From contig NC_043005.1 in assembly GCF_006345805.1 (NCBI RefSeq), positions 19,096,001 to 19,160,000 of the forward strand: 64,000 bases of DNA. The letters are read 5' to 3'. This stretch comes from Octopus sinensis (Eukaryota). Below the pieces are notes generated by a model. The model saw nothing but the letters and a program-made list of their open reading frames with translations. It was not told where the DNA came from and did not search any database. The position numbers and the translations under genes are program-made. Positions 9,107-59,629 of the stretch are shown here, in pieces; position 1 is the first letter of the stretch; each line of letters opens with the position of its first letter.

Positions 9107-9495
9107 GGCGCAGGCGTGGCTGTATGGTAAGAAGTAGCTCCTCAATCACATAGTTTCAGGTTCAGTCCCACTGCGTAGACCTTGAGTAGGCGCCTCCTAC
9201 TATAACCCCGGATCGACCAAAGTGTTGTGAGTGGATTCGACAAACAGAAACTGAAAAAAGGTTCACACACACACACACACACACATATATACTATATATA
9301 TATATATACATATTTGTATCTTTGTATTTTTACTTGACCTCCACCTCCACTTGACAACCTGTATTGGTTGTTTACTTCGCATGACTTTGCGTTTCTGCAA
9401 AAGAGACTAATCGAATAAGTATTTGGTCTAGGAACGAATAAATAATTCGGTCACCTTTTCCGACTAAACCCCTCAAGGTGTGGTCGCAGTCAAAT
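9107..9495 (+). mobile_element. degenerate SINE family A
   Basis: GGCGCAGGCGTGGCTGTATGGTAAGAAG head and decayed tail. Confidence 0.75.
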
Positions 9496-17027: not shown

Positions 17028-17248
17028 TGGCAGAAACGTTAGCACGCCAGGCGAAATGCGTAGCCGTGTTTCGTCTGTCGTTACGTTCCGAGTTCAAATT
17101 CCGCCGAGGTCGACTTTGCCTTTCATCCTTTCGGGGTCGATAAATTAAGTACCAGTTACGCACCGGGGTCGATGTAATCGACTTAACCCCTTTGTCTGTC
17201 CTTGTTTGTCCCCTCTATGTTTAGCCTCCTGTGGGCAATAAAGAAATA
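17028..17248 (+). mobile_element. SINE family B, tail-1 subfamily (B2)
   Basis: TGGCAGAAACGTTAG...GAGTTCAAATTCC head, GTCGACTTTGCCTTTCATCCTTTCGGGGTCGATAAA core, tail CTCTATGTTTAGCC...GCAATAAAGAAATA. Confidence 0.9.
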
Positions 17249-17290
17249 ATATGTACGTGCGTATGTGTGTGTGTGCATATGTATGCATGT

Positions 17291-18494: not shown

Positions 18495-19113
18495 GGTGGG
18501 CAAGCAGAATCGTTACCACGTCAGGCAAAATGCTTAGCGATATTTCGTCCATCGGTATGTTCTGAGATCAAATGTTGCCAAGGTCGACCTTGCTTTTCAT
18601 CCTATTGAGGTCGATAAAATAAGTACCAGTTAAGTACTGAGATCGATGTAATCGATTTTCTCCATCTCTCAAATTTGCTGGCCTTATGCCAAAATTTGAA
18701 ATCAATATCAAGATTATCGAAGGCGGTGAGCTGGCAGAATCGGTAGCACGCCGGGCGAAGTGCTTAGCGATATTTCGTCTGCCGTTACGTTCTGAGTTCA
18801 AATTCCGCCGAGGTCGAATTTGCCGTTCATCCTTTCGGGGTCGATAAATTTAGTACCAGTTACGCACTGGAGGTCGATGTAATCGACTTAATACCTATGT
18901 CTGTCCTTGTTTGTCCCCTCTGTGTTTAGCCCCGTGTGGGTAATAAAGAAATAGGTATTTTGTCTGCCCTTACGTTCTGAGTTCAATTCCGACACTGCTT
19001 TTCATCCTATCGGGGTCCATAAAATAATTACTAGTTGAGTACTGGGGTCAATGTAATTAGCTTAACTCCTGACGCGAATTTGTTGGTCTTGTGTCAAAAT
19101 TTGTTACCAATAT
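18495..19113 (+). mobile_element. cluster of three SINE B units
   Basis: Units at about 18495-18712, 18720-18952 and 18953-19113; the third restarts mid-head at GGTATTTTGTCTG. Confidence 0.85.
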
Positions 19114-21540: not shown

Positions 21541-23260
21541 GGAAGCGGCGAGCCGGCAGAAGCGTTAGCACGCCGGACGAAATGCGTAGCCGTATTTCGT
21601 CTGCCGCAAACGTTCTGAGTTCAAATTCTGCCGAGGTCGACTTTGTTTTTCATCCTTTGGGGGTCGATTAAATAAGTACCAGTTACGCACTGGGGTCGAT
21701 GTAATCGACTTAATCCCTTTGTCTGTCCTTGTTTGTCCTCTCTATGTTTAGCCCTTTGTGGACAATAAAGAAATAGGTATTTTGTCTGTCTAAGGCGGCG
21801 AGCTGGGAGAAACGTTAGCATGCCGGGCGAAATGCGTAGCCGTATTTCGTCTGCCGTTACGTTCTGAGTTCAAATTCCGCCGAGGTCGTCTTTGCCTTTC
21901 ATCCTTTCAGGGTCGATAAATAAACTACTAGTTACGCACTGGGGTCGATATAATCGACTTAACCCCTTTGTCTGTCCTTGTTTGTCCTCTCTATGTTTAG
22001 CCCCTTGTGGGCAATAAAGAAATAGGTATTTCGTCTGTCTAAGGCGGCGAGCTGGCAGAAACGTTAGCACGCTGAGCGAAATGCTTAGCGGTATTTCGTC
22101 TGCCACTACGTTCTGAGTTCAAATTCCGCCGAGGTCGACTTTGCCTTTCATCCTTTCGGGGTCGATAAATTAAGTACCAGTTACGCGCTGGGGTCGATGT
22201 AATCGACTTAATCCGTTTATCTGTCCTTGTTTGTCCCCTCTGTGTTTAGCCCCTTGTGGGTAGTAAAGAAATAGGTATTTCGTCTGCCGAAATACCTATT
22301 TCTTTATTGTCCACAAGGGGCTAAACATAGAGAGAACAAACAAGGACAGACAAAGGGATTAAGTCGATTACATCGTCCCCAGTGCGTAACTGGTACTTAT
22401 TTAATCGACACCCCCCCCAAAGGATGAAAAACAAAGTCGACCTCGGCAAAATTTGAACTCAGAAGGTAGCGGCAGACGAAATACGGCTACGCATTTCGTC
22501 CGGCGTGCTAACGCTTCTGCCGTCTCGCCGCCTTCCGATATAAGTTAACAACAATAATAACAATAATTTCTCAGATTTTACTGGAGAGGACAGTCGTCCT
22601 CTAAGTCGTCCCCTTGTCTTAACTGCAATGTGTTTCATCAATCGTGGTAGAATGAAAGCAAAATATAAATTAAGGCGGCGAGCTGGCAGAAATGTTAGCA
22701 CGCCGGACGAAATGCTTAGCGGTATTTCGTCTGCGTTACGTTGTGAGTTCAAATTCCGCCGAGGTCGACTTTGCCTTTCATCCTTTCGTGGTCGATAAAT
22801 TAAGTACCAGTTACGCACTGGGGTCGATGTAATCGACTTAATACCTATGTCTGTCCTTGCTTGTCCCCTCTGTGTTTAGCCCCTTGTGGGTAGTAAAGAA
22901 ATAGGTATTTCGTCTGCCGCTACGTTCTGAGTTCAAATTCCGCCGAGGTCGACTTTGCTTTTCAACCTTTGGGGGTCGATTAAATAAGTACCTGTTATGC
23001 ACTGGGGTCGAAATAATCGACTTAATCTGTTTGTCTGTCCTTGTTTGTCCCTTCTGTTTTTAGCCCCTTGTGGGTAGTAAAGAAATAGGTATTGTGTCTG
23101 TCTTTACGTTCTGAGTTCAAATTCCGCCAAGGTCGACTTTGCTTGTCATCCTTCCGAGGTCGATAAATTAAGCACCAGTTGCGTACTGGAGTCGATCTAA
23201 TCGACTGACCCCTTTCCCACCAAATTTCAGGCCGTGTGCCTAGAGTAGAAAGGATTATTA
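21541..23260 (+). mobile_element. tandem/nested SINE B array containing an inverted duplication
   Basis: Plus-strand units start at about 21541, 21792, 22041, 22672, 22905 and 23088; 22290-22678 is the reverse complement of 21400-21782. Confidence 0.9.
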
Positions 23261-49181: not shown

Positions 49182-49466
49182 CTATATTTCTGAACATAGA
49201 CACACACACACATTCATAACTACCCGTTTTCCTTATTTCTTTCTCTCCCTCATTGTACCTTGCTCTCTCACCTCCTCTCTCAATATGTCTATTGATATTT
49301 GCATGTATCTGTTAAGTCTCACCACACTGAGGGACATTTGTTATCTTTATTTTAAGAATTATAGATATCTTGCTGAACACATTTAGTGGTAACTGCATAT
49401 TTTGTACAGTATCCTGTTTGCTGAAATATTGAACAGAGAAGCGCGGTATTATATTGTTCATCTGAA

Positions 49467-50008
49467 GGTGGCAGAAAGGTTAGCACATCGGGCAAAATGC
49501 TTAGCGGTATTTCGTCTGTCTTTACGTTCTGAGTTCAAATTCCACCGAGGTCGACTTTGTCTTTCATCCTTTCGGGGTCGATAAATTAAGTACCAGTTAC
49601 GCACTGGGGTCAATGTAATCGACTTAATCCGTTTGTCTCCTTGTTTGTCCCCTTTTTTTTTAGCCCCTTGTGGGTAGTAAAGAAATAGGTATTTCGTCTG
49701 TCTTTACGTTTTGAGTTCAAATTCCACCGAGGTCGACTTTGCCTTTCATCCTTTCGGGGTCGATAAATTAAGTACCAGTTACGCACTGGGGTCAATGTAA
49801 TCGACTTAATCCGTTTGTCTGTCCTTGTTTGTCCTCTCTGTTTTTAGCCCCTTGTGGGTAGTAAAGAAATAGGTATTTCGTCTGCCTTTATGTTTTGAGT
49901 TCAAATTCCACCGAGGTCGACTTTGTCTTTCATCCTTTCGGGGTCGATAAATTAAGTACCAGTGAAATACTGGGGTCGATGTAATCGACTAACCCCCCCC
50001 CCCCAAAT
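49467..50008 (+). mobile_element. SINE B nested array (three bodies)
   Basis: Tail-1 followed by GGTATTTCGTCTG at about 49689 and 49872; the last unit starts tail-2. Confidence 0.88.
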
Positions 50009-55926: not shown

Positions 55927-56667
55927 AATAATAATAATAATAATAATAATAACAACAACAACAATAATAACAATAATAACAACAACAACAAATATAATAA
56001 CGACACCTTTGAGATAATGCCCGCAGCTGCAACTTTCATATTATCTCTAAGAATAGGGAGAAGGTGACGGAGTTGTTTTTAAGTATAATTCCAATGCGGT
56101 GATGTTTAAACCCCACAAAAGCTCCTGGTAAAATGTTGATAAGGAAAAATGGAGTTAAATATGATAAAAAATGAATATATAAAATAATAAGCCTATGGAG
56201 AAGAGGGAACAATTTAAGAATTTATACTAGAGGGTAAATGAGCAGTTATGCAACGAGTGAGAAAAGAAGTGGGGGAGATTAGCGAATGGTTAAAATACTT
56301 AAAAGGGCATGGGACAAGTGCGTCAGTTATTAAAATGGTGAATTTTCTGGGCGAATTATGACAGGGAAGTTGTAGTATTTAAGGAGGCAAGGAATAAACA
56401 AGGTAAGTAAGATTATAGAAGATTATAGAAGATTATTTAAGATTATAGAAGTAATTTGTTTTATATTTCATCTTTTGGGCTCTCACTCTTTAACAGGCCG
56501 TAACCTGAAGATTGTAAGGAATATACACACGTAAGCCATTTAACTATGCATACGTTTTCCGATTTATACACATCATGCATAGTGCACATATTCATATAAC
56601 TAAATTTTTATTTAAATGTACGTGTATATAGGCGTAGGAGTGGCTGTGTAATAAGAAGCTTGCTTCC

Positions 56668-58768
56668 ACTGCGCATGTGTGAATAATTGTGGTGTTCGGC
56701 ACCAAAGAGGTGAGACATGCTTTTGAAGCCGTCTCGAATTGAAAAATGTTGAAGCTCCATTGTAAGGTAAGATTCTGTTTTTTGGGTCCAGTGGGAATTT
56801 TTGTTGAGAATTGTTTTTGTACAGTCAGGAAGTCCTACTGGATTCAGAATTCTGGTTCAGCCTACATGGGGCAAATCATTTTTCTCGCTGAATTGTGAGA
56901 ATTTTTGTTTGGGGGCGTATTCGTCTTCGATTTATTTTGAGTGAATATTTTTCTCGCTTAATTATGAGAATTATTGCTTGTATTGTGCTTTTTGAAGATC
57001 TTTAATAATTGTGAGAACTGCTGTTTGGGGGAGTGTCTTTGCCTCCGAATATTGAACAATTTGTATATCAATTTTTGTGGAAGTTGTGTTCCAGTTGTCG
57101 CGTTCCGGGAGTACCGAATGGCCGGAAGATTTTTTTGCTGTGTTCCTGAACTATTGACTTTCTTCTAAACTTTATTTGACTTTCTCCTTTTTGTTTATTG
57201 TGACTTTCTTTTGATTTCTTTTATCTTTTTTTTTCTCTTCTCGCTTTTTAAGTTTTATTTTGAATATATTTTCAAAAAAAGAGAAAAAAAACATGGCAAT
57301 GAAAAAAGACAAAGTTTTGGAGTGGGAGATTATACCGCCCAAAAAGTGGTTGAAAGACCGTGAAGATAGGACAGTGGTGTTGAGAACCTACTCCGAGTCA
57401 CTCAACACCATTGCCCTATTCGAAAAGACGGCAATTGAAAAGGAGTTGGCAGAGTATTTGCCAACAATTAAATTCATTTCCAGGGGTGTCAGATATGCAA
57501 CGGTGTGGTTGCTATTTGATACCCCTGAAGAGGCTCGCAAATTTGCTAGTCAACCCTTGGAGGGTGAGGAAATTTTGTTCCTTCCCACGTATTATGGAAG
57601 GAGGTTGACGAAAGCTTGGGTCTGTGGGTTGCCACCCAGGATAAAACCCGAGTGGATATAGGAGACTATCCGCCGTGGTCTGGGTGGCAGCGGGACCAAG
57701 CTTCTTTATGTGAAAGTTCTTCCTGCGGCTGATTGGGTTGGGTCAAAAGCTGTTTTGACCCTTTGGACCCAATCAGCCAATCTGGTTTTTCCAGAGTTTT
57801 TGAAAATGGCCGGGTGCAGGTACCCGGTGATACTATAGGGTCGTCCCCCCAGATGGCATCGGTGCCTGGAGTCCGGCCATATAAAGAAAAACTGTCCCCG
57901 GGAACAAAATAAGGTCCCGGAGCAGTTGAGTGAGACCCCTGTAGAAGAGGGAATGAAGGCGGCCGAGGAAGAGGAGGACTCCTCAAATAGGAGCCGAAAG
58001 AGGAAGAAGGTGAGCAACAATGTGTGCTCACCGAAGGATCCTAGGGATGAGGAGGGGAAGGCCAATCTTCCGGCCACGGAGGAGACGCACCCTCCCTCAG
58101 TTGAAAAGAAAAAAAAGAGGAAGAGGAAGAGAAACGGGACATTGCCGGCAGTCGTTGACATAGTACCGGAATGTCCCGGAACTACGTCGGTTGGGGTTGT
58201 GCCACCGGCAGGAGAAGAAACACCGTTGGCGGGAACTGTGCCGCCAATGAAAGATTTGGATATCTCGCCCCCGGGGAAGACGAAGTATTGATCTTCTATA
58301 GAGGCGGAGAGATTGAAAGGTGATGGAAAAGCACCATAAGGGAGCACCTTTAGCCTTCACACAGAACCCCGAATGACCCCCGCAGGTAGCTGTGGAGGTC
58401 ATAACGTTTGACGTGACGTTTGGGCTGAAGGGGCTCAATGAGGAATATCGCTTGTACCCGGGCAACGCTAACACGGAACTCGATACGATTTTGAAAGAGG
58501 CGTGGAGGATGGTAGAGGATGCGGGCTCAAGTTATTTTGAGGGTGAGTTATAAATTGTGGCACTGTGTGACACAAACACTCGATAATAGGTACTTCGCAT
58601 TCTTTTTAAACTCCCGGCTGTCAACGTGGTCTGCTCTGCAGGCGGCTAGATATTTGACTGGGGTCCGGAAAGAGGAGGAAGGGAAAAGTGATAATGTATT
58701 TTTTATGTTTGGTTGACATGTTGATTTTTATGTAAGTGTAAGGTCTCCATGGCTAATTTGATAAAGTA
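56668..58768 (+). mobile_element. ORF1-only non-LTR retroelement (HAL1/Tx1-like), 2.1 kb
   Basis: 625-bp leader, ORF1-like frame, no APE/RT recognised, 15-bp target duplication on both sides. Confidence 0.75.
57293..58291 (+). pseudogene. L1/Tx1-type ORF1p (RRM-like region, CCHC knuckle, basic/acidic tail) with two in-frame stops
   Basis: Track ORFs 57260 and 57926 are in the same frame; TAG at 57659 and 57836; GRPPR-W(C)HRCLESGHIKKNC at 57854-57895. Confidence 0.78.
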
Positions 58769-58783
58769 AAGAAGCTTGCTTCC

Positions 58784-59235
58784 TGGAGGGAGGAGCCCAT
58801 GCCCTGGACAGGGGACGAGGAGTGGCTTTCGCAGGTGACTACGAAGACTCAAAGGACATGTTTAGATACGCCTTGAGGGGCCCCGACCTAGAGCTGGTGC
58901 ATTGCCTAAGGGAAGTGTAAGCCAGGTCTGGGAGGAGGGGCTTTGTGTATTGTATTTATATTTATTATATGTAATTATTGAACTATGTTGTTGTTTGTAA
59001 TGGACTGTTAAGTCCAAAAATTGAAAAGTTGTAAAAGTTGTAAGAGGTTTAATACCTCGTTTTGTGTTTGGTTTTAAAGAACAATGTTTTAGAGAAGCAG
59101 AAGTCGGCGGGCACTTTTTGTCTTATCCCATCCTTATCATCTTTCCTTCATTATCATTAATTTCATTAATGTCCTTTCCAGCCCGCAAAGCTACTTTACT
59201 CTATGTATTGCCTTTATGGCAAATGTAATGAAATA
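58784..59235 (+). mobile_element. second, probably 5'-truncated element at the same target site (452 bp)
   Basis: Bounded by the same 15-mer; last 20 nt 15/20 identical to the last 20 nt of 56668-58768. Confidence 0.72.
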
Positions 59236-59629
59236 AAGAAGCTTGCTTCCCAACCATATGGTTCTGGCTTCAGTCCCACTGTGTGGCACCTTGGGCAAGT
59301 GTCTTCTATGATAAGCCTCGGGCCGACCAAAGCCTTATGAGTGGATTTAGTAGGCGGAAACTGAAAGAAGTCTGTCGTATATATATATATATATATTATA
59401 TATATATATATATCATGTATCATATATCAGTCGAAAGACACCTGTTGTTATTTCTTGTTGTATTCGTAATTGTGTAACTATCTGGAATGGTCGTGACTTC
59501 TGGTACTTGACGGATGAAAGAAAGCCGAGAATGACCAATCTTTTTTGCCTGTCCTAATTGTTGTTTCTTTTGTCCGCCTTTGTGTTGTCTATCTGTCCGA
59601 ACGTTTTAATGCCCTCTTCGTTTTGCTCC

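What the first reader, a model, noticed from the sequence alone, without database searches (positions are those of the whole stretch)
56631..59388. SINE-targeting retroelements: an ORF1-only element and a second element stacked at one exact site in a SINE head
Seen: AAGAAGCTTGCTTCC occurs exactly three times (56653-67, 58769-83, 59236-50). Removing what lies between restores a SINE A head, and the site falls in the D-arm/anticodon-like part of the tRNA-derived region. The two inserts (2101 and 452 bp) differ internally, but their last 20 nt are 15/20 identical without gaps (ATGGCTAATTTGATAAAGTA vs ATGGCAAATGTAATGAAATA), and both end exactly at the 15-mer. The long insert has a 625-bp leader and one 332-codon ORF1-like frame with a CCHC knuckle, but no recognisable endonuclease or RT. 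Known: Tx1-clade LINEs can be sequence-specific for tRNA/snRNA genes, and HAL1 elements are ORF1-only L1 derivatives. Inference: a non-autonomous ORF1-only family and a relative share a site-specific endonuclease that uses an abundant SINE as a renewable safe-harbour target. I do not recall this being described.
Basis: partly seen in the sequence, partly recalled or inferred. Interest (0 to 1): 0.88.

Follow-up and report, generated by a model that had tools for sequence, protein, structure and literature searches.

The report
Retroelements that target an octopus SINE
One copy of a common octopus SINE was hit twice at exactly the same nucleotides by two LINE-type retroelements, one of which encodes only the RNA-binding ORF1 protein; copies elsewhere sit at the same SINE position, so this is a site-specific, Tx1-like targeting system that uses a SINE as its landing pad, a new target and variant of a known behaviour.

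Summary
AAGAAGCTTGCTTCC occurs exactly three times, and removing the two inserts (2101 and 452 bp) restores a SINE that has eight other copies in the window. All three 15-mers carry the same two departures from the SINE consensus, so they are target-site duplications copied from this SINE.

The suggested decisive test succeeded on a small sample. Two relatives of the long insert in Octopus sinensis (84% and 74% identical, unrelated flanks) also start directly after a SINE head ending ...GCTTGCTTCC. The 84% copy has the same ORF2-less layout. ORF1 evolved under purifying selection (dN/dS 0.19) and models as two RRM-like domains plus a CCHC knuckle.

Distant ORF1 relatives belong to full-length octopus LINEs (APE + RT + zf-RVT; closest solved structure human L1 ORF2p). 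These stack in tandem around short repeated target sequences.

This matches described Tx1-clade behaviour: Tx1-Mar and SINEU-3 target a Mariner transposon with a 16-bp duplication and form tandem insertions sandwiching it. The new points are the SINE target and the selected ORF1-only family.

Limits:
- Three loci support the 5' junction.
- One locus supports the 3' junction.
- No autonomous partner was found.

The parts
56631..56667 (+). Head of the target SINE ('SINE A'), 37 nt, ending in the left copy of the 15-mer.
   Evidence: Aligns to the first 37 nt of eight other SINE copies in the window.
56653..56667 (+). Target-site duplication, copy 1 (AAGAAGCTTGCTTCC).
   Evidence: Exact 15-mer. 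It carries the copy-specific T4A and A14C changes relative to the SINE consensus AAGTAGCTTGCTTAC.
56668..58768 (+). Insert 1: a full-length copy of a non-autonomous, ORF1-only LINE-type retroelement (2101 bp).
   Evidence: Its 5' end coincides to the base with the O. sinensis copy L002 11741, which is 84% identical over positions 1-1950. It has no terminal inverted repeats or LTRs and no APE/RT similarity.
56668..57292 (+). 5' leader of insert 1 (625 bp), with short internal direct repeats and many T-runs.
57293..58291 (+). ORF1 pseudogene: 332 codons, in-frame TAG at 57659 and 57836. It encodes two RRM-like domains, a CCHC knuckle (57854-57895, first Cys changed to Trp here) and a basic, acidic-rich tail.
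   Evidence: 65% amino-acid identity to O. sinensis LOC115225585. dN/dS is 0.19 against L001. AF2 model pLDDT is 81, and Foldseek's top hits are tandem-RRM proteins.
58292..58768 (+). 3' region of insert 1, including a 53-codon ORF (58392-58553) with no detectable relatives. The last ~20-32 nt (58737-58768) form the conserved 3' terminus.
   Evidence: The region is present in L002 13440-13670. There are no protein homologues and no similarity to ORF2 C-termini. The terminus is shared with insert 2.
58769..58783 (+). Target-site duplication, copy 2, sandwiched between the two inserts.
   Evidence: Exact 15-mer.
58784..59235 (+). Insert 2: an unrelated 452-bp retroelement. It is either a 5'-truncated copy of an unknown partner or a short non-autonomous element, and it shares only the 3' terminus with insert 1.
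   Evidence: A profile of the 3' tails of related octopus LINEs and SINE B hits only its exact 3' end within the 2.8-kb region, weakly (E = 0.08). No protein homologues.
59236..59250 (+). Target-site duplication, copy 3, contiguous with the rest of the SINE.
   Evidence: Exact 15-mer.
59251..59415 (+). Remainder of SINE A (body to ~59378) plus its (TA)n tail.

Best explanation
An old copy of an abundant octopus SINE (SINE A) was used twice as the landing site of a sequence-specific, L1/Tx1-type LINE retrotransposition machinery.

Inferred mechanism, by analogy with target-primed reverse transcription of APE-type LINEs:
1. The endonuclease nicks the bottom strand between SINE positions 22 and 23 (top strand ...GGT^AAG...; bottom strand ...CTT^A, an L1-like nick context).
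2. The reverse transcriptase primes on that nick and copies an RNA that it recognises by a short conserved 3' terminus (...ATGGCNAATNTNATNAANTA, no poly-A).
3. The top strand is cut exactly 15 nt downstream (...TTCC^CAACC), which produces a 15-bp target-site duplication.
4. The duplication regenerates the 15-bp core on both sides of the insert, so the site remains a target. A second, independent insertion then gives three 15-mers sandwiching two inserts.

Insert 1 is a full-length member of a non-autonomous family that keeps only ORF1 (an RNA-binding protein with two RRM-like domains and a CCHC knuckle) and must borrow endonuclease and RT in trans. Insert 2 is a different RNA that uses the same 3' terminus and the same site.

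Shown: the triple duplication, the restored SINE, the identical 5' junction at three independent loci, the shared ORF2-less layout, selection on ORF1, and the LINE affinity of ORF1.

Inferred: the nick positions, trans-mobilisation, the Tx1 affinity, and sequential rather than simultaneous insertion.
For: - The 15-mer is exact three times, and the SINE is restored by removing the inserts.
- All three 15-mers carry this SINE copy's two departures from the consensus, so they were copied from the local target.
- The O. sinensis relatives L002 (84%) and L001 (74%) start right after a SINE head ending GCTTGCTTCC, in the same orientation. The outer flanks of the three loci are unrelated.
- Upstream of the 15-mer the three SINE heads differ from one another at six of 22 positions, five of them private to one head; they behave as independent SINE copies, not one inherited unit.
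- The two inserts share only their 3' terminus: 15/20 identical, background about 1e-4 per position.
- L002 has the same ORF2-less layout. ORF1 dN/dS is 0.19 between subfamilies.
- ORF1p models as tandem RRM folds plus a knuckle.
- 80 distant ORF1 relatives were found; of the 20 whose sources were looked up, 11 are from octopods, 9 from unnamed Logan, ENA or MetaClust records. Those fetched with DNA sit upstream of ORF2s with Exo_endo_phos + RVT_1 + zf-RVT, whose best solved relative is human L1 ORF2p (E = 2e-71).
- These LINEs themselves form same-orientation stacks separated by short repeated target sequences (L004, L006, L007), or lie inside an (ATT)n microsatellite (L003).
- Tx1-clade precedent for a fixed-site transposon target, a 16-bp duplication and tandem insertions sandwiching it: PMC4494074.
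- L1-Tx1 families are annotated as recently active in O. vulgaris: PMC13282606.
Against: - Only three loci support the 5' junction. The 3' junction with the duplication is seen only in this window, because both O. sinensis copies are broken before their 3' ends.
- No endonuclease/RT-bearing element with this 3' terminus or this target was found.
- The ORF1 of this family is only 25-35% identical to those of the ORF2-bearing LINEs, so the link to that group is remote.
- All three targeted SINE copies have C at 15-mer position 14, against 1 of 11 uninterrupted copies (Fisher about 0.01). Target preference can explain this, but so could co-inheritance of part of the site with the element.
- Sequential insertion cannot be told apart from one event with template switching.
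Confidence: 0.8

Rival explanations
1. Composite unit. The SINE head is carried as the 5' part of the element, through read-through from the SINE promoter or 5' capture, in the way some Tx1 families carry U1/U2-derived heads. The repeated 5' junction would then reflect inheritance, not targeting.
For: All three element-linked heads share C at 15-mer position 14, which is rare in free SINE copies. Tx1 families with snRNA-derived heads are documented (PMC4494074). Both O. sinensis copies lack a visible 3' junction.
Against: In the window the duplication lies at the end of the head, not outside it, and the rest of the SINE follows the last 15-mer exactly, so a pre-existing SINE was split. A second, unrelated insert without any head uses the same site. 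Upstream of the 15-mer the three heads differ at six of 22 positions, five of them private to one head, as independent SINE copies would. The leader has 12 runs of five or more T on the sense strand, and insert 1 has 17, which would stop a pol III transcript started in the head.
Confidence: 0.07
2. One integration event rather than two. Reverse transcription of the insert 2 RNA was followed by a template switch onto an insert 1 RNA that carried read-through target sequence from its donor locus. This would produce the middle 15-mer in a single step. Targeting would still apply.
For: Template switching and chimeric retrocopies are known for L1-type RTs (for example U6/L1 chimeras, PMC6789731, listed). 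Donor copies would be followed by a near-identical 15-mer (L002: AAGAAGTTTGCTTCC).
Against: The middle 15-mer is identical to the two outer ones, whereas the 15-mers at the other two loci each differ by one base. This favours local copying. Kojima interpreted the equivalent SINEU-3 tandems as sequential insertions. Stacks of up to four different LINEs in L006 are hard to make in one event.
Confidence: 0.1
3. No real specificity. An ordinary L1-like endonuclease with a loose T-rich/A preference happened to hit a favourable site (CTTCTT^A) in a very abundant repeat.
For: The bottom-strand nick context ...CTT^A resembles the L1 consensus (inference from the sequence). SINE A is abundant, with 9 copies in 64 kb.
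Against: There are four insertions (two here, two in O. sinensis). All four have their 5' junction at the same base of the SINE, and both insertions whose 3' junction survives have an identical 15-bp duplication. SINE A makes up only about 2% of the sequence sampled. There is no poly-A tail.
Confidence: 0.03

Closest known systems
Tx1-Mar LINEs and SINEU-3 of crocodilians (Kojima 2015, PMC4494074)
   Same: A LINE lineage and its non-autonomous partners insert at a fixed position of another transposon family, with a long duplication (16 bp; 15 bp here). 'Tandem insertions sandwiching a TSD' are read as sequential insertions. Partners share the target preference.
   Different: The target there is a Mariner DNA transposon; here it is the head of a SINE. 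The non-autonomous partner there is a SINE with an snRNA head; here it is a 2.1-kb element that keeps a selected ORF1. The host is a cephalopod. Tx1 membership is not tested here.
Tx1L in Tx1D of Xenopus, and Tx1-clade families Keno, Kibi and Koshi targeting U2 snRNA genes and microsatellites (as reviewed in PMC4494074)
   Same: Sequence-specific APE-type LINEs that use multicopy sequences as harmless targets. The related octopus LINEs fetched here also sit in a microsatellite (L003) or in repeated short targets (L004, L006, L007).
   Different: None of those targets is a SINE. The autonomous element for the SINE A site has not been found.
HAL1, the ORF1-only 'half-L1' of mammals (from my own knowledge, not checked in a paper here)
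   Same: A non-autonomous LINE derivative that retains ORF1 and lacks ORF2. More than one copy shares the layout, and ORF1 is under purifying selection.
   Different: HAL1 inserts without site specificity and derives from mammalian L1. Here ORF1 is of the RRM + CCHC type and the family is site-specific. Its parent LINE is unknown.
R1 elements of arthropod 28S rDNA (from my own knowledge)
   Same: An APE-type LINE with a fixed target and a fixed long duplication (14 bp). The duplicated target permits repeated insertion.
   Different: The target is a functional rRNA gene, the clade is different, and the element is autonomous.
Dada DNA transposons targeting tRNA/snRNA genes (PMC3706591, PMC8869645)
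   Same: A fixed insertion site inside small-RNA-type multicopy sequences.
   Different: Dada elements have terminal inverted repeats and a transposase. The inserts here have neither. They have LINE-type ORF1, a conserved 3' terminus and a 15-bp duplication.

Membership tests
Target-specific Tx1-type (L1 superfamily) LINE system | ORF2 with an APE endonuclease and an RT that groups with the Tx1 clade in an RT phylogeny. | tested here: not met
   Neither insert, nor the window, has any APE/RT similarity. Distantly related octopus LINEs have Exo_endo_phos + RVT_1 + zf-RVT, and their best solved relative is human L1 ORF2p. No RT phylogeny against reference Tx1 sequences could be run. The inserts can therefore only be dependants of such a LINE, not members by this criterion.
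Target-specific Tx1-type (L1 superfamily) LINE system | ORF1 protein of the RRM + CCHC zinc-knuckle type. | tested here: met
   The AF2 model of the intact O. sinensis orthologue has pLDDT 81. Foldseek's top hits are tandem-RRM proteins (SFPQ/NONO, hnRNP A1 UP1, E about 1e-5). The C-x2-C-x4-H-x4-C motif is intact in L002. Pfam zf-CCHC is only sub-threshold in the window copy but significant in distant relatives.
Target-specific Tx1-type (L1 superfamily) LINE system | Insertion at one defined position of a repeated target, in one orientation, with a duplication of fixed length. | tested here: met
   Four insertions at three independent loci share the same 5' junction. The two 3' junctions in the window show an identical 15-bp duplication. 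The sample is small.
Target-specific Tx1-type (L1 superfamily) LINE system | Tandem stacks of elements separated by the duplicated target. | tested here: met
   The window has 15-mer / insert 1 / 15-mer / insert 2 / 15-mer. Related LINEs form such stacks in L004, L006 and L007.
HAL1-like ORF1-only non-autonomous LINE derivative | ORF1 present and ORF2 absent as a family trait, not as a single deletion. | tested here: met
   The window copy and L002 (16% diverged) share the same layout, including the post-ORF1 segment. L001 is broken too early to tell. Other ORF1-only elements of the wider group occur at L008 7926-9653 and L006 ~700-2187.
HAL1-like ORF1-only non-autonomous LINE derivative | ORF1 maintained by purifying selection. 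| tested here: met
   dN/dS is 0.19 over 274 codons between the window copy and L001, and 0.26 between L001 and L002. The O. sinensis ORF1 (P0001) is intact.
HAL1-like ORF1-only non-autonomous LINE derivative | Derivation from an identifiable autonomous LINE that shares its 5' and 3' ends. | not testable with these tools
   No octopus genome could be searched by DNA. Protein searches with the post-ORF1 frames found nothing, and a profile of ORF2 C-termini found nothing.
tRNA-derived SINE (the target) | A tRNA-related head with A and B boxes, a short body, a simple-repeat tail and high copy number. | tested here: inconclusive
   There are nine copies in 64 kb with a (TA)n/(TG)n tail. A-box-like TGGCTGTGTGG and B-box-like GGTTCAGTCCC are visible in the sequence. 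ARAGORN and Rfam tRNA give no match.
Dada-type DNA transposon targeting small-RNA genes | Terminal inverted repeats and a transposase. | tested here: not met
   The inserts have no terminal inverted repeats. The only protein is LINE ORF1-like.

The most novel reading that the evidence does not exclude
An octopus L1/Tx1-like LINE lineage has specialised on the tRNA-like heads of the genome's own SINEs as dedicated landing pads.

SINE A is hit by the ORF1-only family and by insert 2. SINE B, whose 3' tail matches the full-length LINEs, is hit by SINE B itself at a fixed internal 14-mer, which builds SINE arrays.

SINE expansion would then continually create the niche for the LINE and its dependants. 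ORF1-only elements under selection would show that ORF1p is needed in cis while ORF2p is borrowed.
Probability: 0.45. Interest if true: 0.6.

Novelty: new variant of a known kind. Interest (0 to 1): 0.5.

Why it matters
Site-specific LINEs are studied as natural 'safe-harbour' integrators and as models of how an endonuclease and an RNA 3' end together define an insertion site.

A lineage that uses a high-copy SINE as its target would differ from rDNA or snRNA gene targeting. The target is itself a parasite that multiplies, is neutral to disrupt, and diversifies into subfamilies.

The apparent preference for a minority SINE variant (C at position 14) hints that specificity could be mapped to single bases.

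A selected ORF1-only family in such a system gives a natural separation of ORF1 cis-function from ORF2 trans-function.

For octopus genomics, where SINEs and LINEs together make up about a quarter of the genome (PMC13282606), it would also explain SINE arrays and nested repeats that confuse repeat annotation.

Tried and rejected
- Pfam on ORF1 and on the two downstream frames gave nothing significant.
- Two protein searches with ORF1 returned only two O. sinensis models.
- A search with the post-ORF1 frame of insert 1 joined to the terminal frame of insert 2 found nothing. A profile of ORF2 C-termini from related LINEs did not match them either. The idea that these frames are ORF2 remnants is therefore unsupported.
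- Folding the two 3' ends showed no shared structure. The insert 1 end folds no better than shuffles.
- ARAGORN and Rfam did not recognise the SINE as tRNA.
- A metagenome scan for a conserved 33-mer of ORF1 found nothing.
- The O. bimaculoides relative P0004 is not on record with DNA.
- The Logan contig L005 is a relative with no SINE context.
- A DNA transposon or LTR element was rejected because there are no terminal inverted or direct repeats.
- Orthology or segmental duplication of the three loci was rejected because their flanks are unrelated.
- The antisense near-match to the 15-mer inside ORF1 (57692-57706) was judged a coincidence built on the AAGCTT palindrome. It is not conserved in L001.
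Full report
**What is in the sequence.** The window is octopus-like DNA. A ~165-nt SINE with a (TA)n/(TG)n tail, called SINE A here, occurs nine times in 64 kb. At 56631-59415 one copy is split after its 37th base.

The 15-mer AAGAAGCTTGCTTCC is exact at 56653, 58769 and 59236 and occurs nowhere else. Between the copies lie 2101 bp (insert 1) and 452 bp (insert 2). Joining 56667 to 59251 restores a SINE that aligns across the junction to five other copies over nearly its whole length, and to two more in part.

The SINE consensus at the site is GTGGT|AAGTAGCTTGCTTAC|CAACC. This copy differs at positions 4 (T to A) and 14 (A to C) of the 15-mer, and all three 15-mers carry both changes. They are therefore duplications of the local target, not sequence brought in by the inserts.

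The inserts have no terminal inverted repeats, no LTRs and no poly-A. They share only their last 20-32 nt: 15/20 and 22/32 identical, against a background of about 1e-4 per position. The remainder is no more alike than shuffled sequence.

**Insert 1.** It has a 625-bp leader, then a 332-codon frame (57293-58291) with two in-frame TAG stops and no frameshift, then 477 bp of 3' sequence. The knuckle reads W-x2-C-x4-H-x4-C here and C-x2-C-x4-H-x4-C in a relative.

Pfam gives nothing significant. An AlphaFold model of the intact O. sinensis orthologue (pLDDT 81) has two beta-alpha-beta domains. Its best matches among solved structures are tandem-RRM proteins (SFPQ/NONO, hnRNP A1 UP1; E about 1e-5). 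This is the RRM + CCHC type of LINE ORF1 protein.

There is no endonuclease or RT similarity in the region or anywhere in the window.

**Other copies.** Protein searches found two O. sinensis gene models, and their loci were fetched.
- In L002 a copy 84% identical to insert 1 begins at the same base as insert 1 (ACTGCGCATGTG...). It is preceded by GGCGCAGGCGTTGCCGTGTGGTAAGAAGTTTGCTTCC, a SINE A head ending at the same position.
- In L001 a 74%-identical subfamily begins after GGCTGAGGCATGGCTGTGTGGTAAGTAGCTTGCTTCC.

The sequences outside the SINE heads are unrelated among the three loci. Upstream of the 15-mer the heads differ from one another at six of 22 positions, five of them private to one head. 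These are independent SINE copies hit at the same base, in the same orientation.

Both O. sinensis copies are broken before their 3' ends (L002 at about insert position 1990, L001 at about 1640). The 3' junction is therefore documented only in the window, by two inserts.

L002 has the same ORF2-less layout, including the small post-ORF1 frame. ORF1 dN/dS is 0.19 between the window copy and L001, and 0.58 between the window copy and L002. ORF1 was thus kept functional while the family diversified without ORF2.

**An unexplained bias.** Ten have A at 15-mer position 14 and one has C, whereas all three interrupted copies have C. By Fisher's test this is about 0.01.

The machinery may prefer a minority SINE variant next to the top-strand cut, or it may have been active when that subfamily was expanding. 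The bias is also the best argument for the composite-unit rival.

**The wider LINE group.** An exhaustive profile search found 80 distant ORF1 relatives. Of the 20 whose sources were looked up, 11 come from octopods (O. bimaculoides, O. sinensis, O. vulgaris, Argonauta hians); the other nine are unnamed Logan, ENA or MetaClust records.

Where DNA could be fetched, these ORF1s precede an ORF2 with Exo_endo_phos, RVT_1 and zf-RVT domains. Its closest solved relative is human L1 ORF2p (E = 2e-71 over endonuclease and RT).

These LINEs behave as target-specific elements:
- L004 (O. vulgaris) is a tandem array of 99-100% identical 5.28-kb units separated by ACCCGAYA-like sequence.
- L006 holds four stacked elements, with ACTGAATACTCGTCAT at two of the junctions.
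- L007 holds two elements, each preceded by TTTTTCAAACAGCTGGTCG.
- The L003 LINE lies between (ATT)n tracts.

ORF1-only elements recur in this group. L008 7926-9653 has an intact 379-aa ORF1, a 10-bp duplication GCTGGGTTCG and the group's 3' tail. L006 ~700-2187 is another.

The group's 3' tail (...TTGTCCCCTCTNTGTT.GCCCCTTGTGGGTA.TAAA...) loosely resembles the termini of inserts 1 and 2. A profile of it hits, within the 2.8-kb region, only the exact 3' end of insert 2, and only weakly (E = 0.08).

**Mechanism.** The simplest reading is target-primed reverse transcription by a sequence-specific APE-type LINE enzyme. The bottom strand is nicked at ...CTT^A, between SINE positions 22 and 23. Priming occurs on an RNA recognised through its conserved 3' terminus. 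The top strand is cut 15 nt downstream, giving a 15-bp duplication.

The duplication rebuilds the core of the site, so a second insertion is possible and yields the sandwich seen here. The nick positions, trans-mobilisation and order of events are inferences.

The middle 15-mer is identical to the outer two, whereas the 15-mers at the other two loci each differ by one base. This favours two local events over one event with template switching, though only modestly.

**Comparison with what is known.** Kojima (2015, PMC4494074) described crocodilian Tx1-Mar LINEs and SINEU families that insert preferentially at fixed positions of the Mariner-N4_AMi transposon. They have a 16-bp duplication (AGGTTCCCATCAGCAT) and 'tandem SINEU-3 insertions ... 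sandwiching a TSD', read as sequential insertions.

Other Tx1 families target LTR elements, Harbinger transposons, microsatellites and snRNA genes, and Tx1L targets Tx1D. The architecture found here is therefore a known behaviour of the Tx1 clade.

A recent O. vulgaris repeat annotation lists 13 recently active L1-Tx1 families but says nothing about targets (PMC13282606). Five literature searches found no report of a LINE-type element that targets a SINE. That library is incomplete.

Two points are new relative to the papers I could read:
- the target class, which is the head of a SINE;
- a site-specific ORF1-only family under selection.

Membership in Tx1 proper is not established, because the element has no RT and no reference phylogeny could be run.

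**Verdict.** This is a new variant of a known kind. My confidence in site-specific insertion into SINE A is about 0.8, and I score interest at 0.5.

Noticed in passing
window 18720-19065, 21545-23206, 49466-49990: A second SINE ('SINE B', ~236 nt, starting AAGGCGGCGAGCTGGCAGAAACG...) forms head-to-tail arrays. Some are full units separated by a 14-mer, TATTTYGTCTGYCK, that equals SINE B's own internal positions 52-65. Others follow the pattern [1-236][50-236][50-168]. A solitary copy (17028-17251) lacks the 14-mer. This looks like repeated insertion of SINE B into a fixed site of SINE B's own head, the same architecture as the finding but with another SINE as target.
   Followed up: partly
window 22231-22275 versus L004 5668-5712 and L006 7292-7333, 12588-12630: The last ~45 nt of SINE B (TTGTCCCCTCTGTGTTTAGCCCCTTGTGGGTAGTAAAGAAATAGG) closely match the 3' tails of full-length APE-RT LINEs of O. 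vulgaris and O. sinensis. This is a probable LINE/SINE partnership.
   Followed up: partly
L004 1-13026 (O. vulgaris OX597840.1): A tandem array of at least three 99-100% identical full-length LINEs with a period of ~5279 bp. ORF1 (503 aa) and ORF2 (1132 aa) are intact in the first unit, and short ACCCGAYA-like sequences lie between the units. It is probably a recently active target-specific LINE.
   Followed up: partly
L008 7926-9653 (O. vulgaris OX597833.1); L006 ~700-2187 (O. sinensis): Further ORF1-only elements of the same LINE group. The L008 element has an intact 379-aa ORF1, no ORF2 within 8 kb, the group's 3' tail and a 10-bp duplication GCTGGGTTCG. ORF1-only derivatives seem to be recurrent in octopus.
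   Followed up: partly
window 59186-59199: About 37 nt before its 3' end, insert 2 carries GCAAAGCTACTTTA. This is the antisense of the junction plus target (TAAAGTAGCTT-GC, close to the consensus SINE site). With the following 15-mer it folds into a hairpin better than shuffles (z = -2.7). Insert 1 has no equivalent near its end. Unexplained.
   Followed up: no
window 57692-57706 (minus strand): Inside ORF1 there is a 13/15 antisense match to the 15-mer (GGGACCAAGCTTCTT). It is built around the AAGCTT palindrome and is not conserved in the L001 subfamily, so it is probably chance.
   Followed up: partly
window 9107-9260; L003 4890-4990: SINE A has divergent subfamilies at the target site: AAGAAG-TAGCTCCTCAATC in the window copy at 9107, and AAGAAGCTTGCTTCT in an uninterrupted, internally deleted copy in O. 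sinensis. Variation at the site exists on which target preference could act.
   Followed up: no
L002 6001-32638: The O. sinensis gene model 'K02A2.6-like' (P0002) is a chimera. It splices the first 46 codons of the retroelement's ORF1 to an integrase (rve) fragment, so it is an annotation artefact built from transposon pieces.
   Followed up: no
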